A stretch of DNA of 64,000 nt, taken from NCBI GenBank assembly GCA_001179505.1, contig CDMY01000613.1, positions 1 to 64,000 of the forward strand. Direction: 5' to 3'. The DNA is from Vitrella brassicaformis CCMP3155 (taxonomy: Eukaryota > Protista > Chromerida). The notes under the pieces are model-generated. The model searched no databases. It was not told where the DNA came from and worked only from the letters and a program-made list of their open reading frames with translations. The position numbers and the translations under genes were made by a program. This document shows, piece after piece, positions 546-9,123 of the stretch (position 1 is its first letter; each line of letters begins with the position of its first letter).

Positions 546-2649
546 ACAAGTCGCGCCTATTGTGCGGGAACGAAAGATGCAGTCCCCACTTTGGCAATGA
601 TGTAATCCCAGAGGCGCGGGGGTGGACTTTTTATACACCATGCACGAAGCTTTTGACCAGTTTCTACTTCCGTTGCACTGGGTCATGAGCCACAGGCCCG
701 CAGCGGCTGAAGGGACGAGTAGGTGTCGGGAGACATACATGCTATCATACATGCCAAAAGGTGGCTGCATGGACTGCTTCAAGTTTGTTCAGTGTTTTGC
801 CAGCGGCTTCACGACCGCTGAATGAGTCTCTAGTCTGCAAAGTGGGGAGAGACGCACCTCACTACAGGTGGAGTGACGTGTCTCCTCCCCCATAGCAAGG
901 CTGGACAACTCGGAAGCTGTCGCAAGGGGGAGCTATAGGCTTTGACATGCGGTGCGAGTATAAGTGGGCCATCAATATGAGTATACACTGTTCCAGCTTC
1001 ATGCAGGCCCTCAGCTTCAGTCACAGCTCGGTTCGTGTGCCAAGCTGGTCATGAGCGCTCATTTTATGACATTGGTTGCGCCCATTTTATGACGGACGTG
1101 TGTGTGTCTGTGTGTGTGCATGTGTGTCACTTTGTGTGTATGTGTGTCACTGTGTGTGCATGGTTGGTTGCAGTCAAATGAGTCTGTGGTTGGTTGCACT
1201 CAAATGAGTCTGTGGCGACTATCGTCTGTTGCACACTCTACCGTGCCCTGGTTCCCCACAAGTACAGCAAACGGAGGCCACGTCAGGTGGTGCGAGTAAA
1301 ATCAACTGGCGAGTAAAATCAACTGGTGCAGCGGCTCGGCACCCACCGAACAGACAAACGACGAAGTAAAAAGCCACAGAAGATCCCTGCTCGAAGACAG
1401 ACACGCCGTGTGCATTCTCGTCCCGTGTCCCTTTGTCTGGCTTGCAGCTCACCGTGAATGGCTTGCCTTTCTTCGAGAAAGAGAACGCCCAGCTCGTCCC
1501 AACCCCTCTCTCCAAAGGTCAGGACATAATGAGGGAGCCGAAGAGCTTCCTGCTTTTCCTGCAGCGATGCTGTCCTTCATCTCCGCGCGCCGTGGCAGAC
1601 GCGGGGGAGTGACGAAGAAGCACGCTGCAATGGCGACCAGCGTCGCCTCACTGTTACTTGCTCCATTTCTCGGCTGCTCTTCTATCAGCCATTCGCGTTC
1701 AACGTCCACCTTTCCAAATTCATTGGCTGGCATTGGCGTTCGTCGACAACATGCGCTCCTCTGTCGGCTGACTGAAGGAAGTGTCGGTGGCGGAGCCGAA
1801 GAAGGACGAATCAACTCTCAGCTGGCCGGCTCTTCCGCGGTGTTGCCCTCCGACTGTTGCTGTTGGCGGTCGGATGGAAGTCCTTATAAGTCGCTGCTCG
1901 GAAGTTTCTCTCTCAGCCGCTCCCCTTTATGACTTGCACACTGATTTGCTGCGGCCTCGGCCCTCCCTGACCCTGACAGGCTCCACCAGCTGCAGGCCTT
2001 GGCCGCTGCGGCTCTTGTTCCGCCACTCTTGCTACTCCATATTGCGGCTGGCTGAAAGGAGGCAATAGAGGGGCCGAAGGGCGACTGTTCAGCTCGGCAG
2101 TGCCGCAGCTGTCATCATTCGCTGTTGTCACACACTCGCCTCCGTTCTGCAGGAGCTGAGTGTCGACTGCAATGGTGGCCGCTAAGGAAGAGAGGAAGGA
2201 GGGACGGCTGGCGCCAGCCGGAGAGGAAGGGAGCTGGCAAGCTTAGCTCGCAAGTGACAAAAAAAAAGCTCTCTCACAAGGGAAAAAAGAAGCAGAGCTA
2301 CGACGCTTGCAGTGCTATCCTCCTCACCCCTTCCCTGATCTACGCCATTTCTGCCGGCGGTTGAGTCGCACCTGTGCTGCCGACACGATGATGCTGCCCT
2401 GTGCGAGATGGGATGTGCGCCGGCTCTCGTGGCTAGTGAGGCGTCCTGGGCGTGCCAGATCTGGTGCTGCTGGTGGTGCGCGGCGTGTGGTCTCCCCGAG
2501 GGACTCGCTCTCTAGCCTTGGAGCTTCGGCTCTTGCTAATATGTCCTTCGATGCCTGTCACAGCACAGTTCGGCGTTCTTACCGACGGGCAATCTTATTG
2601 GCTCCAAGTTTTTTGATCGACAGCTCGCTTTTGGGGGCAAAATCAGAAG

Positions 2650-5600
2650 ATGGGCAATTGCTGCAGTCGCTTCCCAAGAGTGACATGGGGGACGTGTGAG
2701 TGGTCGTGTTGCTGTCCACGACAGCAAGACGACCACTCACACGTGCCCCATGTCGCTGAGGCCAAGGCAGAGCCCCCGGCTGAGACCAAGGAGCAAGCCA
2801 AGGAGAAAGAGAACGCCAAGGCTGTTGAGGAGGCCCTACATGCTCCTGCGGCTGAGGAGGCCAGGAAGGCACCCGAGGCACCCGAGGAGCCCAAGAAAGA
2901 GCCCCCAGCCGAGGAGGGAGAGGTGGCCGAGCCCTCAGCGCCACAGGAGGAGGGCCCACCCGAGCAGCAGGAGGAGGCAATGGTTGTGGAGAAGAAGGAA
3001 GAGCAGAAGGAGACATCGGAGACCAAGTCGGAGAGGTGCGACGAGGAGACCTCCCCCGAGGAGCCGCCGGCAGGGGTCAAGAGCCGGGCGCCCGACATGA
3101 AGGAGACCAAGGATGAACAGTAAGTGCACATGACACACAGTGTGCAACACAGCACACTGTACCACGACGTCATTCTGTCTGTCTGCCTGCCTGTCTGTCT
3201 GTCTGTCTGTGTAGGAACGAGGCGGTGTTGCTTACGTTGAAGGGCATTTTGGACGAGCTGACGACCGTAACGTTCGACCGGCTCTACCAACAGATACTCG
3301 ACGCTGGAATCACTCAAAACTCTGAGGTGAGTCGGCGAGGGAGTCAGGAAGAGGCAGGGAGGTCCCGTGTGTGTGTTTGTGGATGCATGTCATGTGTGTG
3401 TCGATCAGATTGAGTCGCTCGTGGGGATGGTCTTTGAGAAGGCCACCACGCAGCACGACTTCATTGAGGTGCCCACCCACCCACACACACACACTCTGTC
3501 TGTCTGTCTGTCTGTGTCATCGATCAATCAGATGTATTCGCAGCTGTGTGTGCGTCTGAAGGACGATCTGAAGGCCATCATGGACCAGGGGGGCCAGGGG
3601 GACAAGGCCGACGGAAACAAGGAGGGCACAGAAGAGGACAAGGAGTTCAGAAGGTGTGCACTACACTCATCCATTCTTGCAAGTGTCTTCTCCGTGGTTA
3701 TGCGTGTGTGTGTGTGTGCGTGTGTCGTCGCAGGGTGCTGTTGAATCGGTGTCAGGAGTCGTTTGAGAAGTACCTTAAGCCGCCTGACAATCTCAAGGAC
3801 CTCACGGGTACCCTCCCACGCCCACCTGTCCAGAGCTCCATCCATTCACTCACCATAAACGGCCCTCGGCCATCTCCATGCCATGTGTTGTGTCGGTGCA
3901 GGTGGCGCTTTCGCGGTGGCTTACTTCGATTCTTACTACCAGATGCTCGGCAATTTCAAGTTCGTGGGTACGTGGATGCCACACCTTCGTTGACGCAGCA
4001 GACACGCACACACACAGCTCACCTCTCTCTCTCTGTCTCTCTCTGTCTCTCTCCCTCTCTGTATGTGTGTGGTGCAGGTCAGTTGATGATGGATGGTATG
4101 TTGAGCGCCAAGGCGCTCTTTGTGTACCTCGACGAGCTCTGGGACCACGGCGAGAAGCAGGGCAAACAGGGAGAGGCACAACTCGTAAGATACCGACGCA
4201 CACACAGAGCACCCTCCATCCATCCATCCATACCTCGGTGTGTATGTGTGTGTGCAGGAGTGCGTGTGCACCTTCCTCAAGACCATCGGCCCCGTATACA
4301 ACATGGCGCAATACGTGAGCAGCCACCCTTACACAACATATCTACTGGCCATCTGCCCCTTCATGCATCTGTGTGTGTGTGTGTGTGCCATCCATCCATC
4401 GACCCATCGATGCAATGGAACCAGCGAGCGGATCTGCAGCAGTGGTTCCACAAGCTAGCGGAGAAGTCGCGCGACGCAACCCTCGGCAAACGTGTTAGGC
4501 GCCTCATGAAGGTACGTGTGCGTCCGCACCGAGGCAGACAGACAGACAGAGGCGCCATAGACAGAAGATTGTATGTCTGTGTGCATGTTTGGCTATGTTG
4601 GCTGGTTGGCTATGGTGGTTGGTCGTAGGATGTGTTGGATCTGCGAACCGACGGTTGGCGCCAGGTGGTGAAGCCGGGCAAGGTGCAGGGCCCCTCCAAG
4701 CTGAGGGACATCCACAGACAACACGTCGAGGAGGAGGGAGAGAACATCGAACTCAGAAACTAAACCTGGTGCGATTGCCCCTGCCCCCAAGACACACAAT
4801 CATCTCTCTGTGTGTGTGTCTGTGTGTGCAGGAGTCGCGCGGGTTGGCTCCCCCATCGGAGGAGGGTGTGTTGCCGACCCCCAGCGCTGGCCCCAAGCCC
4901 CCCGCCGCCGCTGCTGCTGCTTCTGCCAGTGTAGGCGAGACAACATAAGACAACACACCGCATTTTCTTGCCGATGAGTGTCACGTTAGTGTGTCTCTCC
5001 ATCTCTCTCTGTTGTGTTCGTCAGTCATCCCGTCCCCAGGAGGCCTCTCGCGTCCAATCCGGCACCCCCGGGCAGCCAACCAGGTACTGTATGGCCCGCG
5101 CACCGCGTCCATGCGCCTCGGCACTTGTGTCCCGCTACTGTACCTGCAACCACCGGATGCCTTTCTGTCCGTGTCTGTTCTGTGCAGTGTGATAACGTCC
5201 CGCCGTGTGATCAAGGGCAGCGACCTGCGGGGCGATCGCGACGACGAGCGGCGGGAGAGGCGGCAGCGTCGCGAGCGCGAGAAGGAGGAGATGGCCAGGG
5301 GCACTGCCACCACCCCCACACCCCCGCCCACGCAGCCAACGGCCGCTGACGAGAGGTCCACGTCACCAACAGCTGCAGCAACAGCAGCAACAGCAGCGGG
5401 GGGTGGTGCAGAGGAGGGGACGAGCCCTCAGCCTGCGCCAGCGGCCCCTACTGATGAGGACCGGGTAAGGCAAAGAGGCCGGCAGGTGATGAGGTGGATT
5501 CTTCATTCCTTTCTCTGTTGGCTAATGTGGGCGTGGTTCGGTCGTCATGTCAGCAGGATTTGGCCACGCCCGTGGGCGCCACCAACAACCGCGAGGCCAC

Positions 5601-6369
5601 CATCCACCTCAAGTCGATCCTCGGCATAGGGAGAAGGGACCTTCATGACGGCGAGGAGTCGTCGGTGGCTGGCGAGGGAAAGGGCCGCAAGGCGTGGGCG
5701 GACGTGAGCGACGACGAGGACGTCCTGCCGCAGCACCACCAGCACCGCGGCGAGAGTGGAACCCCGCAAAGGCGTGACGGTATGTCTGTGGGCGAGTTCA
5801 TCGATGGACACAGCCTGGTCGATCCCTCGTGTGTGCGTGTGGCTTGCTTGGTGCAGAGGAGGACGAGAAGGAGGAGGAGCGCTGTGGCGAGCGAAAGCGT
5901 GGCGGTGGCGGCGATCGGCCCTCTCGTCCGCCGGGCAGGGACAGATACGACGAGCATGACGACAGACGTGAGTCGAGTCGAGTCGAGAGAGTGACACACA
6001 CACATTCATTCATTCAGACACTCATACGACGACACGCAGACACAGACACGGCCAGGCGTCACATGATCTGGTGTGTGTGCAGGTCGTGGCGGTGGAGGTG
6101 GCGGTCGCGGCCCTCGCCCGCCGCTGGGGAGGGAGAGGTACCCGCCCGTCCCGGCAGCCGTAAGCAGTGTGATCCATCCATCCATCCATCGAGTGGTTCG
6201 TGTGTTGGTTGGTCAGTATAAAGGCCCGTATGGCCTTATCCTCGACAACATCCACTACGAGGCCACCAAACGCGACGTGGAAGTCTTCCTTACACCTTGC
6301 AGAGTCAGACAGACAGCACAGCACAGCCACCCATACAACCCTCCCTCCCACGCCCACCTTGTCTGTGCA

Positions 6370-6403
<34 letters not shown>

Positions 6404-6931
6404 TGTGTGCCGTGTGTGCGTGTGTGGCTGTGCAGGTGGACCACATGATGTTGGAAGCCGACCATCGCAACCCTGTCAAGAACCTCGGCAGATGTGAGCG
6501 ACCACACACATGCACACACCCCCAGGCGCCTCACCGCCTTGTCACATGTCGCGCACACTCAGGTTACGTCCAGTTCGACAACCGTCGCGACTTTGAGGAG
6601 GCATGGACATACGAAGGCCGGGTGGGTGCGGACACACTCACACACAATCTTCAATCAGACGCAGGCACACACTGCCTCCATCCATGTGTTTCAGATGATG
6701 CTGGGTCGGAGAATCCGCATCAGCACCGCCGACGAGATGAAATACGCCGTCGGCGGCCGACTGGACCCAGCAGCCGCAATCCGCTGCAACGACAACAACA
6801 CTACCACCAGCAGCACCACGAGAGGCCGAGGGCGGGCCAACGGGGCCTTGTTGCAGAGGACGCCCAATGGCAGAGGAGGGAGAGAGGGGCGCGGCCGAGG
6901 TCAGAAATACATACACAAACCAGATAGATGA
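2650..6931 (+). CDS. Multi-exon MIF4G-domain (eIF4G-like) protein with N-terminal MGNCC acylation motif and C-terminal RRM (eIF4B/eIF4H-like); one -1 frame break near 4735
   Basis: Spliced exons give LKGILDELTTVTFDRLYQQI, VGMVFEKATTQHDFIEMYSQLC, MLGNFKFVGQL, RVRRLMKDVLDLRTDGW and GPSKLRDIH, typical of eIF4G middle domains. The RRM is LILDNIHYEATKRDVEVFL...GYVQFDNRRDFEEAWTYEGRMMLGRRIRISTAD. GT-AG introns are phase-consistent from 4832 to 6931. Confidence 0.8.
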
Positions 6932-8301
6932 CAACCAAAACACCAGCTTAACCGCATTGCATTGCTTGCTGTGTGTTTTTGCCGTTGCTGTGTGTGCAGC
7001 CTGGCCGGGAAGAGAGTAAGGGTATTTCTATGTGTGTGTAGTGGATTGATTTGTCGCGTTGATACCTAATCTTTCTCTTTGTTGCCTAGTCAGTGCCTGG
7101 CTCCTTGCCCGCATCGCCCGCCTGTTTTGCGTGTTTTGCTCACCTACCTTTGCCTGACCCTGACTGTGGCCGTGGCGTGGCTATTTGCTGCATCCTTCCG
7201 GTGCCGGCATCCCATCCTCCTTCCTTACCTCCTGTTGGCCTGCCTGCCTGGGTGTGTGTGTTATTTGCCGGCCAGTCAGTTACATCGTATCAGTAGAGGG
7301 TGAGTGCCACTATTGATTGAATATATATGTTGAAACGAACAAACGGGTCTCTCTGTCTGCCTGTGTGTTTGCGTCTTGGTGGGGGCGTGGCGGGTGTCTG
7401 TGTCTGTGTGGCCGGATGGATGGAGTGGTGTACTTGAGTGTCTTTGTTGCGCCGCGGGCAGGGCTCCATCCCTCTCCCTCTACCTCTCTTGCCTACGCCC
7501 GCGTCTGTTGAGTGCAATACGTGCCAGTCCATTGAGTCCGTGACACAGACAGCCAGACACACAAACAAACAGACAGACAGACAGACAGAGGGGTGCCGTC
7601 CCATTGTAGCTACCCATACAGACAGACACCCACACGCCCGTATGCCACACCACGCCACACCATGCACCGAACCAGCCAGGCAGCCGCTCGAGAGGCATTA
7701 GGTGGATGTCGTCTGTCTGGTGTGTTTGTGTGTGATGTGAATGGTGTGGTGTGTCGTGTTGTGCTGTATTGTATTGTATTGTGCTGTGCTGCATAGGACG
7801 TTCCTTCCTTCATGCGCGCGTGTGTGAATGGCTGGTTGCCTTGCCCTGCCCTGCCTGTCTGCGTATGGATGGATGCCTGTTTGCTTGTGCCGTTTGCCTG
7901 TGATCTGGGTGTCTGGCTGTCTTGTTGTCTTGCTAGTATTTCTCGACTTCTTTGCTTTGATTGGATGTGTCTGACTAATCTTTCTGGACATCTCAACAAT
8001 AATGTTTCGGCCGCCTGATAAGTATGATTCACGTTGAGGTCAACAAAGACAACATTGCCAACCACACACAGGAAACATAAATGCAGGCAGCAAATCATAG
8101 TCATGGTCAGCGAAAACACCACGTGTGGACGCATTCGTGTCCCTACCGACGATACTTTACAGACACATCCTGCCTGCCTGTCTGCCTGTCTGCCTGTCGA
8201 TGGATCTTTCTGCGCGCATCTCCACTCCATCGTCGGACCACGCCGCAGTCTGTAAGTGCCCCCCACCGACAGCAGCAGACGGCCGGCGGTTTTGTATGTG
8301 G

Positions 8302-9123
8302 TCATGCTACATCTCTCCACAAGTTGGTGGACTTCTTGTCCGTGTCGACGCCATGCACAACTATGCTGCTCACACATCACACACACAGTTATCATGCCGT
8401 TTGTTTGCCTCACGTGTGGTGGTTCGCTTCTCTCACCTGAACGCAGCGCTGCCGAGGACGGCCGTGGCAAAAAAGTTGGCCGACTCACGACCAACTACCG
8501 AACTGCACACATACACACACGCACCAGACAGCACCACTTGCAGACCTTTCGTCTGTGTGTGTGAGAGTGTGTGTGGCGGTTTTCTCCCTCACACGAGTGC
8601 GCCGGCCACAGCCCCTCCAGTGCCGGCGTCCAGCGGGTAGGGCACCCCGATGCGCCGCAGCGCACACGACATGAACGACGTCACAACTGAACCAACGCAC
8701 ACAGCCAACCGTCCATCAGACACACACGGAGAGAATCCGACAATAAAGCAGCCTGGCTTCCCTGTACTGAGACCGTGTGTGTGTGGCTGTTGGATGGACA
8801 GATGACTTACAGCACCAAGATCCAAAGTACAGGGCGGTCTTGCCCGTCAGCAGACTCCGACGACCAATCCACCGCACGCCGCGCAACACTGACGAGTGCG
8901 GCCAAATGTTGCCCGAAGAGGGCGGCCGAGATGCTGACGCGCCTGCACTCGGCTGCTGATGAGTGGGAGTGGCACTGCTGCTGCTGCGAGGTTTGCGCTT
9001 GGGTGTGTTGAGTTCTTTGGCGAATAGAATGCCGAAGACTGTGCCCGATACGATGCCGCGGAAGAAGGACTCGACGCTGCCGTCCAGACAGGCCACCTCG
9101 GGCGGCACCACCACCAGCGACAT
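8302..9123 (-). CDS. Small membrane protein, probable Tim17/Tim22/Tim23-family member (4 exons)
   Basis: CLDGSVESFFRGIVSGTVFGILF, KTALYFGSW, SFMSCALRRIG, DAGTGGAVAGAL: Gly-rich TM segments in the Tim17-family arrangement. The spliced model ends NLWRDVA*. Confidence 0.5.

What the first reader, a model, noticed from the sequence alone, without database searches (positions are those of the whole stretch)
2650..6931. N-acylated eIF4G-like MIF4G domain fused to an eIF4B/eIF4H-like RRM
Seen: MGNCCS N-terminus, an acidic linker, a MIF4G domain, then in-phase exons through an Arg/Gly-rich region and a WADVSDDED motif to an RRM. Established: MGxC(C) signals myristoylation plus palmitoylation in alveolates (as in GAP45); MIF4G binds eIF4A, and eIF4B/H RRMs stimulate it. 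Inference: a membrane- or pellicle-tethered scaffold that supplies both eIF4A partners, i.e. a localised translation-initiation module I do not recognise as described.
Basis: partly seen in the sequence, partly recalled or inferred. Interest (0 to 1): 0.72.

Follow-up and report, generated by a model that had tools for sequence, protein, structure and literature searches.

The report
Young eIF4G–eIF4B chimeric gene, frame-broken
In the alga Vitrella brassicaformis a 2.5-kb piece of the eIF4G gene was copied between a new lipid-anchor-like first exon and an eIF4B/eIF4H-like gene, but the joined reading frame is interrupted and both domains have lost key conserved residues, so it looks like a young, probably decaying gene chimera and not an established membrane-bound translation module.

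Summary
These are the MGNCCS start, an acidic tract, a MIF4G domain (Pfam 2e-24), the WADVSDDED motif and an eIF4H/eIF4B-type RRM. The window is Vitrella brassicaformis CCMP3155, and the fused 841-aa model is already a public unnamed protein (CEM26085.1).

- Window 3097-5563, which holds the MIF4G and the linker with their introns, is a DNA-level copy of the alga's own eIF4G gene (78.6% identity).
- A 1-nt deletion puts a TAA at 4761-4763, just before the inherited splice donor. The public model avoids it only by using a donor weaker than all 31 reference donors.
- Transcript contigs from a near-identical Vitrella source confirm splicing from exon 13 to the 3' end. They also carry a different frame break, between the WAD exon and the RRM exons.

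The MIF4G copy changed about five times faster than its parent. It lacks the conserved eIF4A "Site 3" tryptophan and several invariant residues. The RRM lacks two of three RNP aromatics.

Against pure decay, exonic indels are few and nearly all in frame.

Best reading: a lineage-specific chimeric duplicate that is relaxed or decaying.

The parts
2650..3119 (+). Exon 1. Holds the MGNCCS start (2650-2667), a Cys-rich stretch and an acidic low-complexity tract. Only the last ~23 nt (3097-3119) are eIF4G-derived.
   Evidence: GC1/2/3 = 70/49/74, as in the other coding exons. No relatives found.
2679..2757 (+). Near-perfect inverted repeat inside exon 1 (38-nt arms, 3-nt loop), covering codons 10-36.
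   Evidence: 92% complementary; the 151-nt window folds at -93 kcal/mol, z = -10.8. Unique in the window. No Rfam family.
3097..5563 (+). Segmental copy of the internal part of the Vitrella eIF4G gene, exons and introns together.
   Evidence: blastn against L001 12338-15029: 78.6% over 2760 columns. Exons 91.2% and introns 84.4% identical, with a mosaic of 70-100% tracts.
3215..4763 (+). Exons 2-10: MIF4G/HEAT-1 domain and its C-terminal extension, ending in TAA.
   Evidence: model. (Pfam MIF4G, 86.8 bits). (DAP5 4IUL 2e-24, eIF4GII 1HU3). (82% aa identity to parent).
4755..4763 (+). Site of the 1-nt deletion relative to the parent (parent CTCAGCAAAACC, window CTCAG-AAACTA) and the resulting in-frame TAA at 4761-4763.
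   Evidence: The parent reads ...VLSKTNL|ELRGLAPP through the homologous donor.
4724..4725 (+). Donor used by the public 841-aa model (CAC|GTCGAG).
   Evidence: P0005 joins ...HRQH|ESRG.... (score -1.1, below all 31 reference donors).
4768..4769 (+). Inherited donor (CTG|GTGCGA), homologous to the parent's donor.
   Evidence: (score 5.1).
4832..5464 (+). Exons 11-13 (4832-4930, 5025-5083, 5188-5464): the eIF4G post-MIF4G linker, in phase with everything downstream.
   Evidence: 90% aa identity to parent; indels of 3, 54 and 12 nt.
5291..5293 (+). Derived in-frame ATG (the parent has AGG). First Met downstream of the TAA and a possible start of a 337-aa eIF4B-like product.
5557..5779 (+). Exon 14: N-terminal motif of eIF4B-type proteins, with WADVSDDED at 5695-5721. 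Homology to eIF4G ends about 5563.
   Evidence: Canonical eIF4B hits carry ..SLxDFL..SWADE.. at their N-termini. The exon 13|14 junction is seen in transcripts L002 and L003.
5857..6159 (+). Exons 15-16 (5857-5967, 6083-6159): Arg/Gly/Asp-rich tract.
   Evidence: Junctions seen in L002/L003, but there exon 14|15 is 2 nt out of phase.
6217..6899 (+). Exons 17-20 (6217-6303, 6436-6493, 6563-6621, 6695-6899): eIF4H/eIF4B-type RRM and an RGG tail.
   Evidence: 2DNG 2e-6; 2J76, 1WI8, 6FEC. (family alignment). (beta-alpha-beta-beta-alpha-beta, core pLDDT 88-95).. Junctions confirmed by L002/L003.
6999..7019 (+). Last coding exon (..AWPGRE, stop).

Best explanation
The locus is a Vitrella-specific chimeric gene.

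How it arose. A 2.47-kb genomic piece of the alga's canonical eIF4G gene (the MIF4G domain plus the following linker, twelve exons with their introns) was copied. It landed between a young 5' exon and the body of an eIF4B/eIF4H-like gene. The 5' exon has a MGNCCS start, a Cys-rich stretch made by a 38-nt inverted duplication, and an acidic tract. The copied splice sites let the insert be spliced in frame, and the open frame was kept for most of its history.

Its present state. In CCMP3155 a 1-nt deletion places a TAA just before the inherited exon-10 donor. The default product would therefore be a 429-aa protein: the acylation motif, the acidic tract and a degenerate MIF4G. The 841-aa MIF4G-RRM protein needs a very weak alternative donor. 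In a near-identical Vitrella source a different lesion separates the WAD exon from the RRM exons.

Conclusion. The MIF4G copy has lost conserved eIF4A-contact features and the RRM has lost RNP aromatics. The most likely state is a transcribed duplicate chimera under relaxed constraint and beginning to decay. Any activity would probably be that of a weak or altered eIF4G-like module, not a dedicated localised initiation machine.

Shown: origin by duplication, the stop, donor strengths, residue losses, the RRM family, and splicing of exons 13-21. Inferred: which donor is used, acylation, and loss of function.
For: Identity:
- P0005 (CEM26085.1) equals the spliced model.
- The parent eIF4G is P0003/CEM00964.1.
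- DNA homology covers 3097-5563 including introns.

Stop and donors:
- the annotated donor scores -1.1, against 5.1 for the inherited donor and 0.3-9.9 for the reference donors.
- The assembly was iCORN-polished and the models came from Augustus, which avoids in-frame stops (PMC4501334).

Relaxation of the MIF4G copy:
- Pairwise dN/dS is 0.44-0.69.
- With 115 outgroups, 25 polarised changes fall on this copy and 5 on the parent. They include R163L, N170D, K171E, E175V, K176T, H211D, K291Y and D352N in columns 88-100% conserved.
- The Site-3 Trp motif SxxSW, >=80% conserved, is absent (its role is described in PMC9177959).
- The Pfam score drops from 115 to 87 bits.

RRM:
- RNP1 reads LGRCYVQF and RNP2 reads LILDNI, and it falls below the Pfam cutoff.

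Second lesion:
- L002, L003 and the MMETSP ORF P0127 all show the exon 14|15 junction 2 nt short and the RRM frame without a start.

Lineage restriction:
- A whole-library HMMER search finds close relatives only in Vitrella, and none of 10 long hits has a MIF4G.
Against: - Exonic indels relative to the parent are few: about 6 in 1283 nt, against 36 in 1177 nt of intron. Five of the six are in frame, against 22% in introns. My binomial estimate is p about 0.003.
- No nonsense substitution occurs in about 407 copied codons.
- All splice sites are kept, and one lost acceptor (exon 9) is replaced in frame 9 nt downstream.
- The ORF from exon 11 to the end is intact in CCMP3155.
- The RRM exons are about 99% identical to the transcript contigs, against about 96-98% in the UTR.
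- These points argue that the reading frame was, and may still be, under selection. Gene conversion from the parent (perfect tracts up to 82 nt) could also explain part of them.
- The deletion could be an assembly artefact caused by the near-identical paralogue.
- The weak donor could have RNA-seq support that I could not see.
Confidence: 0.58

Rival explanations
1. One 841-aa (or about 857-aa) protein is made, N-myristoylated and palmitoylated. It uses a working MIF4G and a working eIF4B-like RRM to hold and stimulate eIF4A at a membrane or the pellicle.
For: - The public model is fused.
- The N-terminal motif fits the myristoylation consensus: G2, S6, a basic residue at 7, and Cys4/5.
- The open frame is preserved on both sides of the stop, and indels are in frame.
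- Transcripts join the eIF4G-derived exon 13 to the WAD exon in frame.
- Exon 1 has coding-like GC periodicity.
Against: - The TAA lies before the inherited donor, and the needed donor is weaker than all 31 references.
- The Site-3 Trp and many invariant MIF4G residues are lost, and the branch is about 5-fold faster than the parent.
- Two of three RNP aromatics are lost.
- The RRM is out of frame in three independent transcript assemblies from a near-identical source.
- There is no such architecture outside Vitrella.
- A strong 38-bp hairpin sits 29 nt after the AUG, in sequence made by a recent inverted duplication.
Confidence: 0.14
2. Two products from one region. The first is a 429-aa MGNCCS-MIF4G protein ending at the TAA. 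The second is a separate eIF4B/eIF4H-like protein of about 337 aa started at the derived ATG at 5291, from an internal promoter or by reinitiation. The RRM gene would then be the alga's working eIF4B-like factor, with captured upstream exons as leader.
For: - The TAA at 4761.
- ATG 5291 is a derived change (the parent has AGG) in a good context, and the ORF from there to 7019 is intact.
- Canonical eIF4B proteins carry the WAD motif within about 30 residues of their N-terminus, so exon 14 looks like an original N-terminal exon.
- Both transcript contigs begin inside exon 13.
Against: - The contig starts differ (5329 and 5416) and lie where the sequence becomes near-identical to the parent, so they are more likely assembly breaks.
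- Exons 11-13 keep canonical splice sites and in-frame indels.
- In the transcript contigs the RRM frame has no start at all.
- No promoter evidence is available.
Confidence: 0.15
3. The stop is an assembly artefact. The true genome has one more base near 4756, the inherited donor is used, and the gene is an intact ORF of about 857 aa.
For: - The site lies 24 nt from an 82-nt tract that is 100% identical to the parent gene, where read mis-mapping during polishing is possible.
- One added base would restore ...EL-x-KLNL|ESRG..., parallel to the parent's ...VLSKTNL|ELRG....
- Downstream frame conservation fits an intact ORF.
Against: - The assembly is Illumina-based and iCORN-corrected, and the site is not a long homopolymer.
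- The other signs of relaxation (residue losses, the second lesion in related transcripts) are independent of this base.
Confidence: 0.12

Closest known systems
Vitrella brassicaformis eIF4G (CEM00964.1 / A0A0G4ETI0, 2107 aa)
   Same: Source of window 3097-5563. It has the same exon-intron structure. Amino-acid identity is 82% over the MIF4G part and 90% over the linker.
   Different: The copy lacks the long N-terminal region, the Site-3 Trp and the C-terminal MA3 domain. It carries substitutions at invariant positions and a 1-nt deletion before the exon-10 donor.
DAP5/eIF4G2 and eIF4GII HEAT-1 domains (PDB 4IUL, 1HU3)
   Same: Best solved sequence relatives of the MIF4G part, at E = 2e-24 and 7e-19.
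   Different: Those proteins keep the eIF4A contact sites and are followed by MA3 and W2 domains. Here the domain is followed by an eIF4B-like module.
eIF4H and eIF4B (PDB 2DNG, 2J76, 1WI8, 6FEC chain u)
   Same: Top four sequence matches of the RRM. The PPY-type lead-in, the RRM fold and the N-terminal WAD(E) acidic motif are shared.
   Different: RNP1 has Phe replaced by Arg and RNP2 has Tyr/Phe replaced by Ile. The domain is below the Pfam RRM_1 threshold. The WAD motif lies about 600 residues from the annotated N-terminus instead of about 20.
Dual-acylated alveolate N-termini (GAP45, ISP, CDPK type; from my own knowledge, not tested)
   Same: An MG-x-C(C)-S start followed by an acidic tract.
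   Different: No homology was detected. The Cys-rich stretch here is the product of a recent 38-nt inverted duplication.
Young chimeric genes made by partial gene duplication or exon shuffling (jingwei-type; from my own knowledge)
   Same: An internal gene fragment with its introns was copied into or next to another gene and spliced in frame. Protein evolution is fast while the frame is retained.
   Different: Here one frame-breaking lesion is already present in each of the two sampled sources.

Membership tests
eIF4G-type MIF4G / HEAT-1 domain | Pfam PF02854 match above the gathering score | tested here: met
   86.8 bits against a cutoff of 30.8, residues 165-392.
eIF4G-type MIF4G / HEAT-1 domain | Closest solved relatives are eIF4G or DAP5 HEAT-1 | tested here: met
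   4IUL, 1HU3, 6ZMW, 8OZ0, 8HUJ and 2VSO.
eIF4G-type MIF4G / HEAT-1 domain | Conserved Trp of eIF4A contact Site 3, N-terminal of the domain (yeast W579) | tested here: not met
   The SxxSW motif is >=80% conserved in 111 homologues and present in the parent (ENSWVAS). The window has KSRAPD. Role described in PMC9177959.
eIF4G-type MIF4G / HEAT-1 domain | Invariant first-helix motif R..K.ILNKLT.EKF and the FEKATTQHHF motif | tested here: not met
   The window has L..K.ILDELT.VTF and ..QHDF, with R163L, N170D, K171E, E175V, K176T and H211D.
eIF4G-type MIF4G / HEAT-1 domain | Binds eIF4A | not testable with these tools
   Needs a binding assay.
eIF4B/eIF4H-type RRM | Pfam RRM_1 above the gathering score | tested here: not met
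   13.6-15.7 bits against 20.7, although profile positions 3-70 of 70 are aligned.
eIF4B/eIF4H-type RRM | Best sequence relatives are eIF4H or eIF4B RRMs | tested here: met
   2DNG 2.2e-6, 2J76 6.7e-5, 1WI8 1.4e-4, 6FEC_u 7.5e-4. Fish eIF4H at 1.3e-4.
eIF4B/eIF4H-type RRM | beta1-alpha1-beta2-beta3-alpha2-beta4 fold | tested here: met
   AlphaFold2 model with core pLDDT 88-95. 343 PDB RRM matches, with 1WI8 at rank 2 and 2DNG at rank 6.
eIF4B/eIF4H-type RRM | RNP1 and RNP2 aromatic residues | tested here: not met
   RNP1 is LGRCYVQF against KGF[CG]YVEF. RNP2 is LILDNI against AYVGNL. Two of three aromatics are lost.
eIF4B/eIF4H-type RRM | Acidic WAD(E) motif upstream of the RRM | tested here: met
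   WADVSDDED at 5695-5721. About 20 of the HMMER hits have SWADE at residues 2-45.
N-myristoylated and palmitoylated protein | Met-Gly start, small uncharged residue at 3, Ser/Thr at 6, nearby Cys | tested here: met
   MGNCCSR. It is the first in-frame ATG after a stop, with A at -3 and G at +4.
N-myristoylated and palmitoylated protein | This ATG is the start actually used and the protein is acylated | not testable with these tools
   No transcript or protein data cover exon 1.
Single-ORF fusion gene | Uninterrupted frame through ordinary splice sites | tested here: not met
   TAA at 4761 with the inherited donor. The bypass donor scores below all references.
Single-ORF fusion gene | Transcripts joining the parts | tested here: inconclusive
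   Exons 13 to 21 are joined in L002/L003 but with a frame break at 14|15. Junctions 1|2 and 10|11 were not covered, and two metagenome scans found nothing.
Decaying duplicate (unprocessed pseudogene in the making) | Frame-disrupting lesion(s) relative to the parent | tested here: met
   A 1-nt deletion in CCMP3155 and a different 2-nt phase break in the related transcripts.
Decaying duplicate (unprocessed pseudogene in the making) | Neutral protein evolution with no frame constraint | tested here: inconclusive
   Branch omega is about 0.8-1 by polarisation. However, indels are scarce and in frame and the splice sites are kept.

The most novel reading that the evidence does not exclude
The 841-aa protein is really made, through the weak donor or because the deletion is an artefact. 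It is dual-acylated and acts as a membrane- or pellicle-anchored, neofunctionalised eIF4G/eIF4B hybrid that recruits or sequesters eIF4A or mRNA locally. Its fast evolution would then reflect adaptation and not decay.
Probability: 0.1. Interest if true: 0.7.

Novelty: new member of a known kind. Interest (0 to 1): 0.3.

Why it matters
If the fused protein were functional, it would be the first natural covalent pairing of the two eIF4A cofactors, on a lipid anchor. That would give a direct handle on localised translation in the relatives of apicomplexans.

As the evidence stands, the value is different. The locus is a dated, well-resolved example of how a genomic fragment with its introns can be dropped into another gene and spliced in frame. 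It also shows how such chimeras start to fail.

It is a warning as well. Striking domain fusions in the Vitrella annotation can rest on ORF-maximising splice choices. Earlier notes of this scan list several other eIF4G, eIF4B and MIF4G chimeras in this genome, so fragment shuffling of translation-factor genes may be a general feature worth a systematic study.

Tried and rejected
- Pfam on single exons and on intron-containing ORFs by reference found nothing.
- The search for related loci with P0005:1-470, and a degenerate DNA pattern for GWRQVVKPGKVQGP in metagenome contigs, found no relative.
- The look-up of encoding contigs for P0001 found nothing on record.
- A 7-nt direct repeat, GGGCGCC, flanks the insert at 3086 and 5574. 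I considered it as a target-site duplication defining an in-frame host gene and rejected it, because the phases differ.
- Programmed frameshifting at the TAA was considered and rejected. There is no slippery heptamer, and the +1 frame closes in exon 13 (reading).
- The N-terminal 150 residues have no usable relatives in Pfam or the Atlas.
- Rfam has no family for the exon-1 hairpin.
- No paper names the protein or this architecture.
- There is no second copy of the locus in the window.
Full report
**What is in the sequence**

Reading 2000-7600 and splicing in a local script gives two chains of canonical GT-AG exons.

- Chain A has ten exons: 2650-3119, 3215-3326, 3409-3468, 3532-3653, 3734-3807, 3902-3967, 4078-4184, 4258-4314, 4425-4511 and 4629-4763. 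It encodes 429 residues. These are MGNCCS, a Cys-rich stretch, an acidic tract and a MIF4G domain. It ends in TAA at 4761-4763.
- Chain B has ten exons: 4832-4930, 5025-5083, 5188-5464, 5557-5779, 5857-5967, 6083-6159, 6217-6303, 6436-6493, 6563-6621 and 6695 onward. It is in phase throughout. It carries a basic linker, WADVSDDED (5695-5721), an RG-rich tract and an RRM.
- The ATG at 2650 is the first in-frame ATG after a stop 36 nt upstream. Its context is AAGATGG, and there is no ATG in the preceding 98 nt.

The joined model was built only inside scripts, for translation and local comparison. It was never typed into a search tool. Exons were searched by reference (no hits). Later searches used the id of the public protein, which turned out to equal the model.

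**Organism and public record**

- A word search with an intron-spanning ORF by reference found a Vitrella brassicaformis transcript protein. Its cluster holds the 2107-aa eIF4G of strain CCMP3155 (P0003, CEM00964.1).
- A search with part of that protein returned P0005, which is CEM26085.1 / A0A0G4GAR0 (841 aa). It is 100% identical to chain A residues 1-417 followed by chain B.
- The window is the start of contig CDMY01000613.1, and the annotated gene spans 2650-7019.
- The fused architecture is therefore already in the public annotation, as an unnamed MIF4G protein. No paper mentions it.

**Domains**

- Pfam gives MIF4G at E = 2.1e-24. It gives RRM_1 only 13.6-15.7 bits, below the 20.7 cutoff.
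- The RRM is nevertheless real and of the eIF4H/eIF4B kind. Its four best solved sequence relatives are eIF4H 2DNG and eIF4B 2J76, 1WI8 and 6FEC.
- It aligns with canonical eIF4B/eIF4H RRMs, including the PPY lead-in.
- An AlphaFold2 model has the beta-alpha-beta-beta-alpha-beta topology with core pLDDT 88-95. The model matches hundreds of RRM structures, with eIF4B and eIF4H among the top six.
- Many HMMER hits are canonical eIF4B proteins with ..SLxDFL..SWADE.. at their extreme N-terminus. Exon 14 therefore looks like the original N-terminal exon of an eIF4B-like gene.
- RNP1 (LGRCYVQF) and RNP2 (LILDNI) have lost two of the three canonical aromatics.

**Origin of the MIF4G half**

- blastn of the window against the eIF4G locus (L001) aligns window 3097-5563 with L001 12338-15029. 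Identity is 78.6% over 2760 columns, introns included.
- The copy starts 23 nt before the exon-1 donor and ends about 6 nt into exon 14.
- Ungapped exon identity is 91.2% and intron identity 84.4%. Identity is mosaic, with tracts from 70% to 100% and a perfect 82-nt run at 4651-4732. This suggests gene conversion.
- The MIF4G and linker are therefore a DNA-level partial duplicate of the alga's own eIF4G. The fusion cannot be old or shared with Chromera or apicomplexans.
- A whole-library HMMER search with the WAD-RRM part found close relatives only in Vitrella. None of ten long hits contained a MIF4G.

**The break**

- In the parent, the frame runs ...VLSKTNL|ELRGLAPP... through a donor homologous to window 4768/4769. 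A transcript-derived protein (P0001) is identical to the parent across it.
- The window lacks one base (parent CTCAGC AAA.., window CTCAG- AAA..). Exon 10 therefore reads into TAA 5 nt before that donor.
- The public model avoids this by splicing at CAC|GTCGAG (4724/4725).
- I built a position weight matrix from 31 donors of this gene and its parent. The annotated site scores -1.1, below every reference donor (range 0.3-9.9, median 6.8). The inherited donor scores 5.1.
- The same GT exists in the parent and is not used there.
- The genome paper states that models came from Augustus with RNA-seq intron hints. It also states that the Illumina assembly was iCORN-corrected (PMC4501334). The deletion is therefore probably real, and the weak donor may be an ORF-saving choice. 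I could verify neither point.

**Transcripts**

- The RRM part retrieved a JGI protein (P0125) whose 2633-nt contig (L002) is a spliced cDNA.
- It maps to exon 13 from 5329, then exons 14-20, then 6999 onward. It runs on into the convergent Tim17-like gene.
- A second contig from another sample (L003) is 99.7% identical to L002. An MMETSP ORF (P0127) agrees with both.
- These contigs confirm all junctions from 13|14 to 20|21, including the weak exon-17 donor and the AWPGRE end. They show the eIF4G-derived exon 13 spliced in frame to the WAD exon.
- In all of them, exon 14 is joined to GAGAAGG..., 2 nt short of phase. The WAD frame then stops 14 codons later, and the RRM frame has no start.
- The contigs differ from the window by 1-8% depending on region. 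They come either from a sister strain or from a second near-identical copy, and I cannot tell which.
- Nothing covered junctions 1|2 or 10|11.

**Selection**

- Against the parent, dN/dS is 0.44-0.69 for the MIF4G exons and 0.37-0.56 for the linker exons.
- Polarising with 115 alveolate-type eIF4G homologues puts 25 changes on the window copy and 5 on the parent, with 26 ambiguous. Many fall in invariant columns: R163L, N170D, K171E, E175V, K176T, H211D, K291Y and D352N.
- With dS split equally between the two branches, this implies omega of about 0.8-1 on the copy. This figure is an inference.
- The SxxSW motif holds the tryptophan of eIF4A contact Site 3 (PMC9177959). It is >=80% conserved and present in the parent, but absent here.
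- Against simple decay, exons carry about 6 indel events where intron density predicts about 39. Five of the six are multiples of three, against 22% in introns.
- No nonsense substitution has occurred. A lost exon-9 acceptor was replaced in frame 9 nt downstream.
- Frame maintenance or repeated conversion is therefore evident, while residue-level constraint is weak.

**Other features**

- Codons 10-36 of exon 1 lie in a 38-nt-arm inverted repeat (92% complementary). It forms a very stable hairpin, z = -10.8. This marks the N-terminal coding sequence as recently made.
- Exon 1 does show coding-like GC periodicity.
- A derived ATG at 5291 (AGG in the parent) could start a 337-aa eIF4B-like product.
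- A 640-nt piece of the RRM region, partly duplicated again, sits inside another messy Vitrella gene model, P0129 on locus L005.
- Earlier notes of this scan report several other eIF4G, eIF4B and MIF4G chimeras in this genome, some of them broken. I did not test those.

**Verdict**

- The locus is a lineage-specific chimeric duplicate with a frame-breaking lesion, degenerate functional residues, and a second lesion in related transcripts.

Noticed in passing
window 2679-2757: A 38-nt-arm inverted repeat (92% complementary, 3-nt loop) lies inside the annotated coding sequence, 29 nt after the start codon. It encodes the Cys-rich stretch. The surrounding 151 nt fold at -93 kcal/mol (z = -10.8). 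There is no other copy in the window and no Rfam family.
   Followed up: partly
window 4415-4425 and L001 13815-13832: The parent's exon-9 acceptor (cag|TGGAAT) is mutated to caa in the window. A new AG 9 nt downstream is used, which removes three codons in frame.
   Followed up: yes
window 3902-3967 (exon 6): Exon 6 is only 75.8% identical to the parent although the preceding intron is 95.7% identical. This is a fast-evolving patch (GAFAVAYFDSYY against DDYTEAYFKYKN) within a mosaic of conversion-like tracts.
   Followed up: partly
L005 9847-10703 (CDMY01000176.1; protein P0129 = CEL93512.1): Another Vitrella gene model contains a copy of window 6179-6819 (RRM exons 17-20 with introns) at 89.8% identity. 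It is preceded by a 79% partial repeat of the exon 18-19 region. The annotated protein reads through intron sequence.
   Followed up: partly
window 5291-5293: An in-frame ATG created by a derived change (the parent has AGG) inside the eIF4G-derived linker. It is the first Met after the TAA.
   Followed up: no
window 6998-8816 and L002 962-2633: The transcript contig runs from this gene's 3' end into the convergent Tim17-like gene (annotated 8302-9123, minus strand; introns 8369-8436 and 8503-8592). The two 3' ends overlap, or the unstranded assembly merged them.
   Followed up: partly
window 5857-5860 and L002 330-345: A tandem acceptor (cagAG|) sits at the start of exon 15. Use of the second AG would give exactly the 2-nt phase shift seen in the related transcripts.
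   Followed up: no
L001 6001-16223: The canonical Vitrella eIF4G is 2107 aa, with a very long low-complexity N-terminal region before the MIF4G and an MA3 domain. No W2 domain was detected by Pfam in residues 1300-2107.
   Followed up: no
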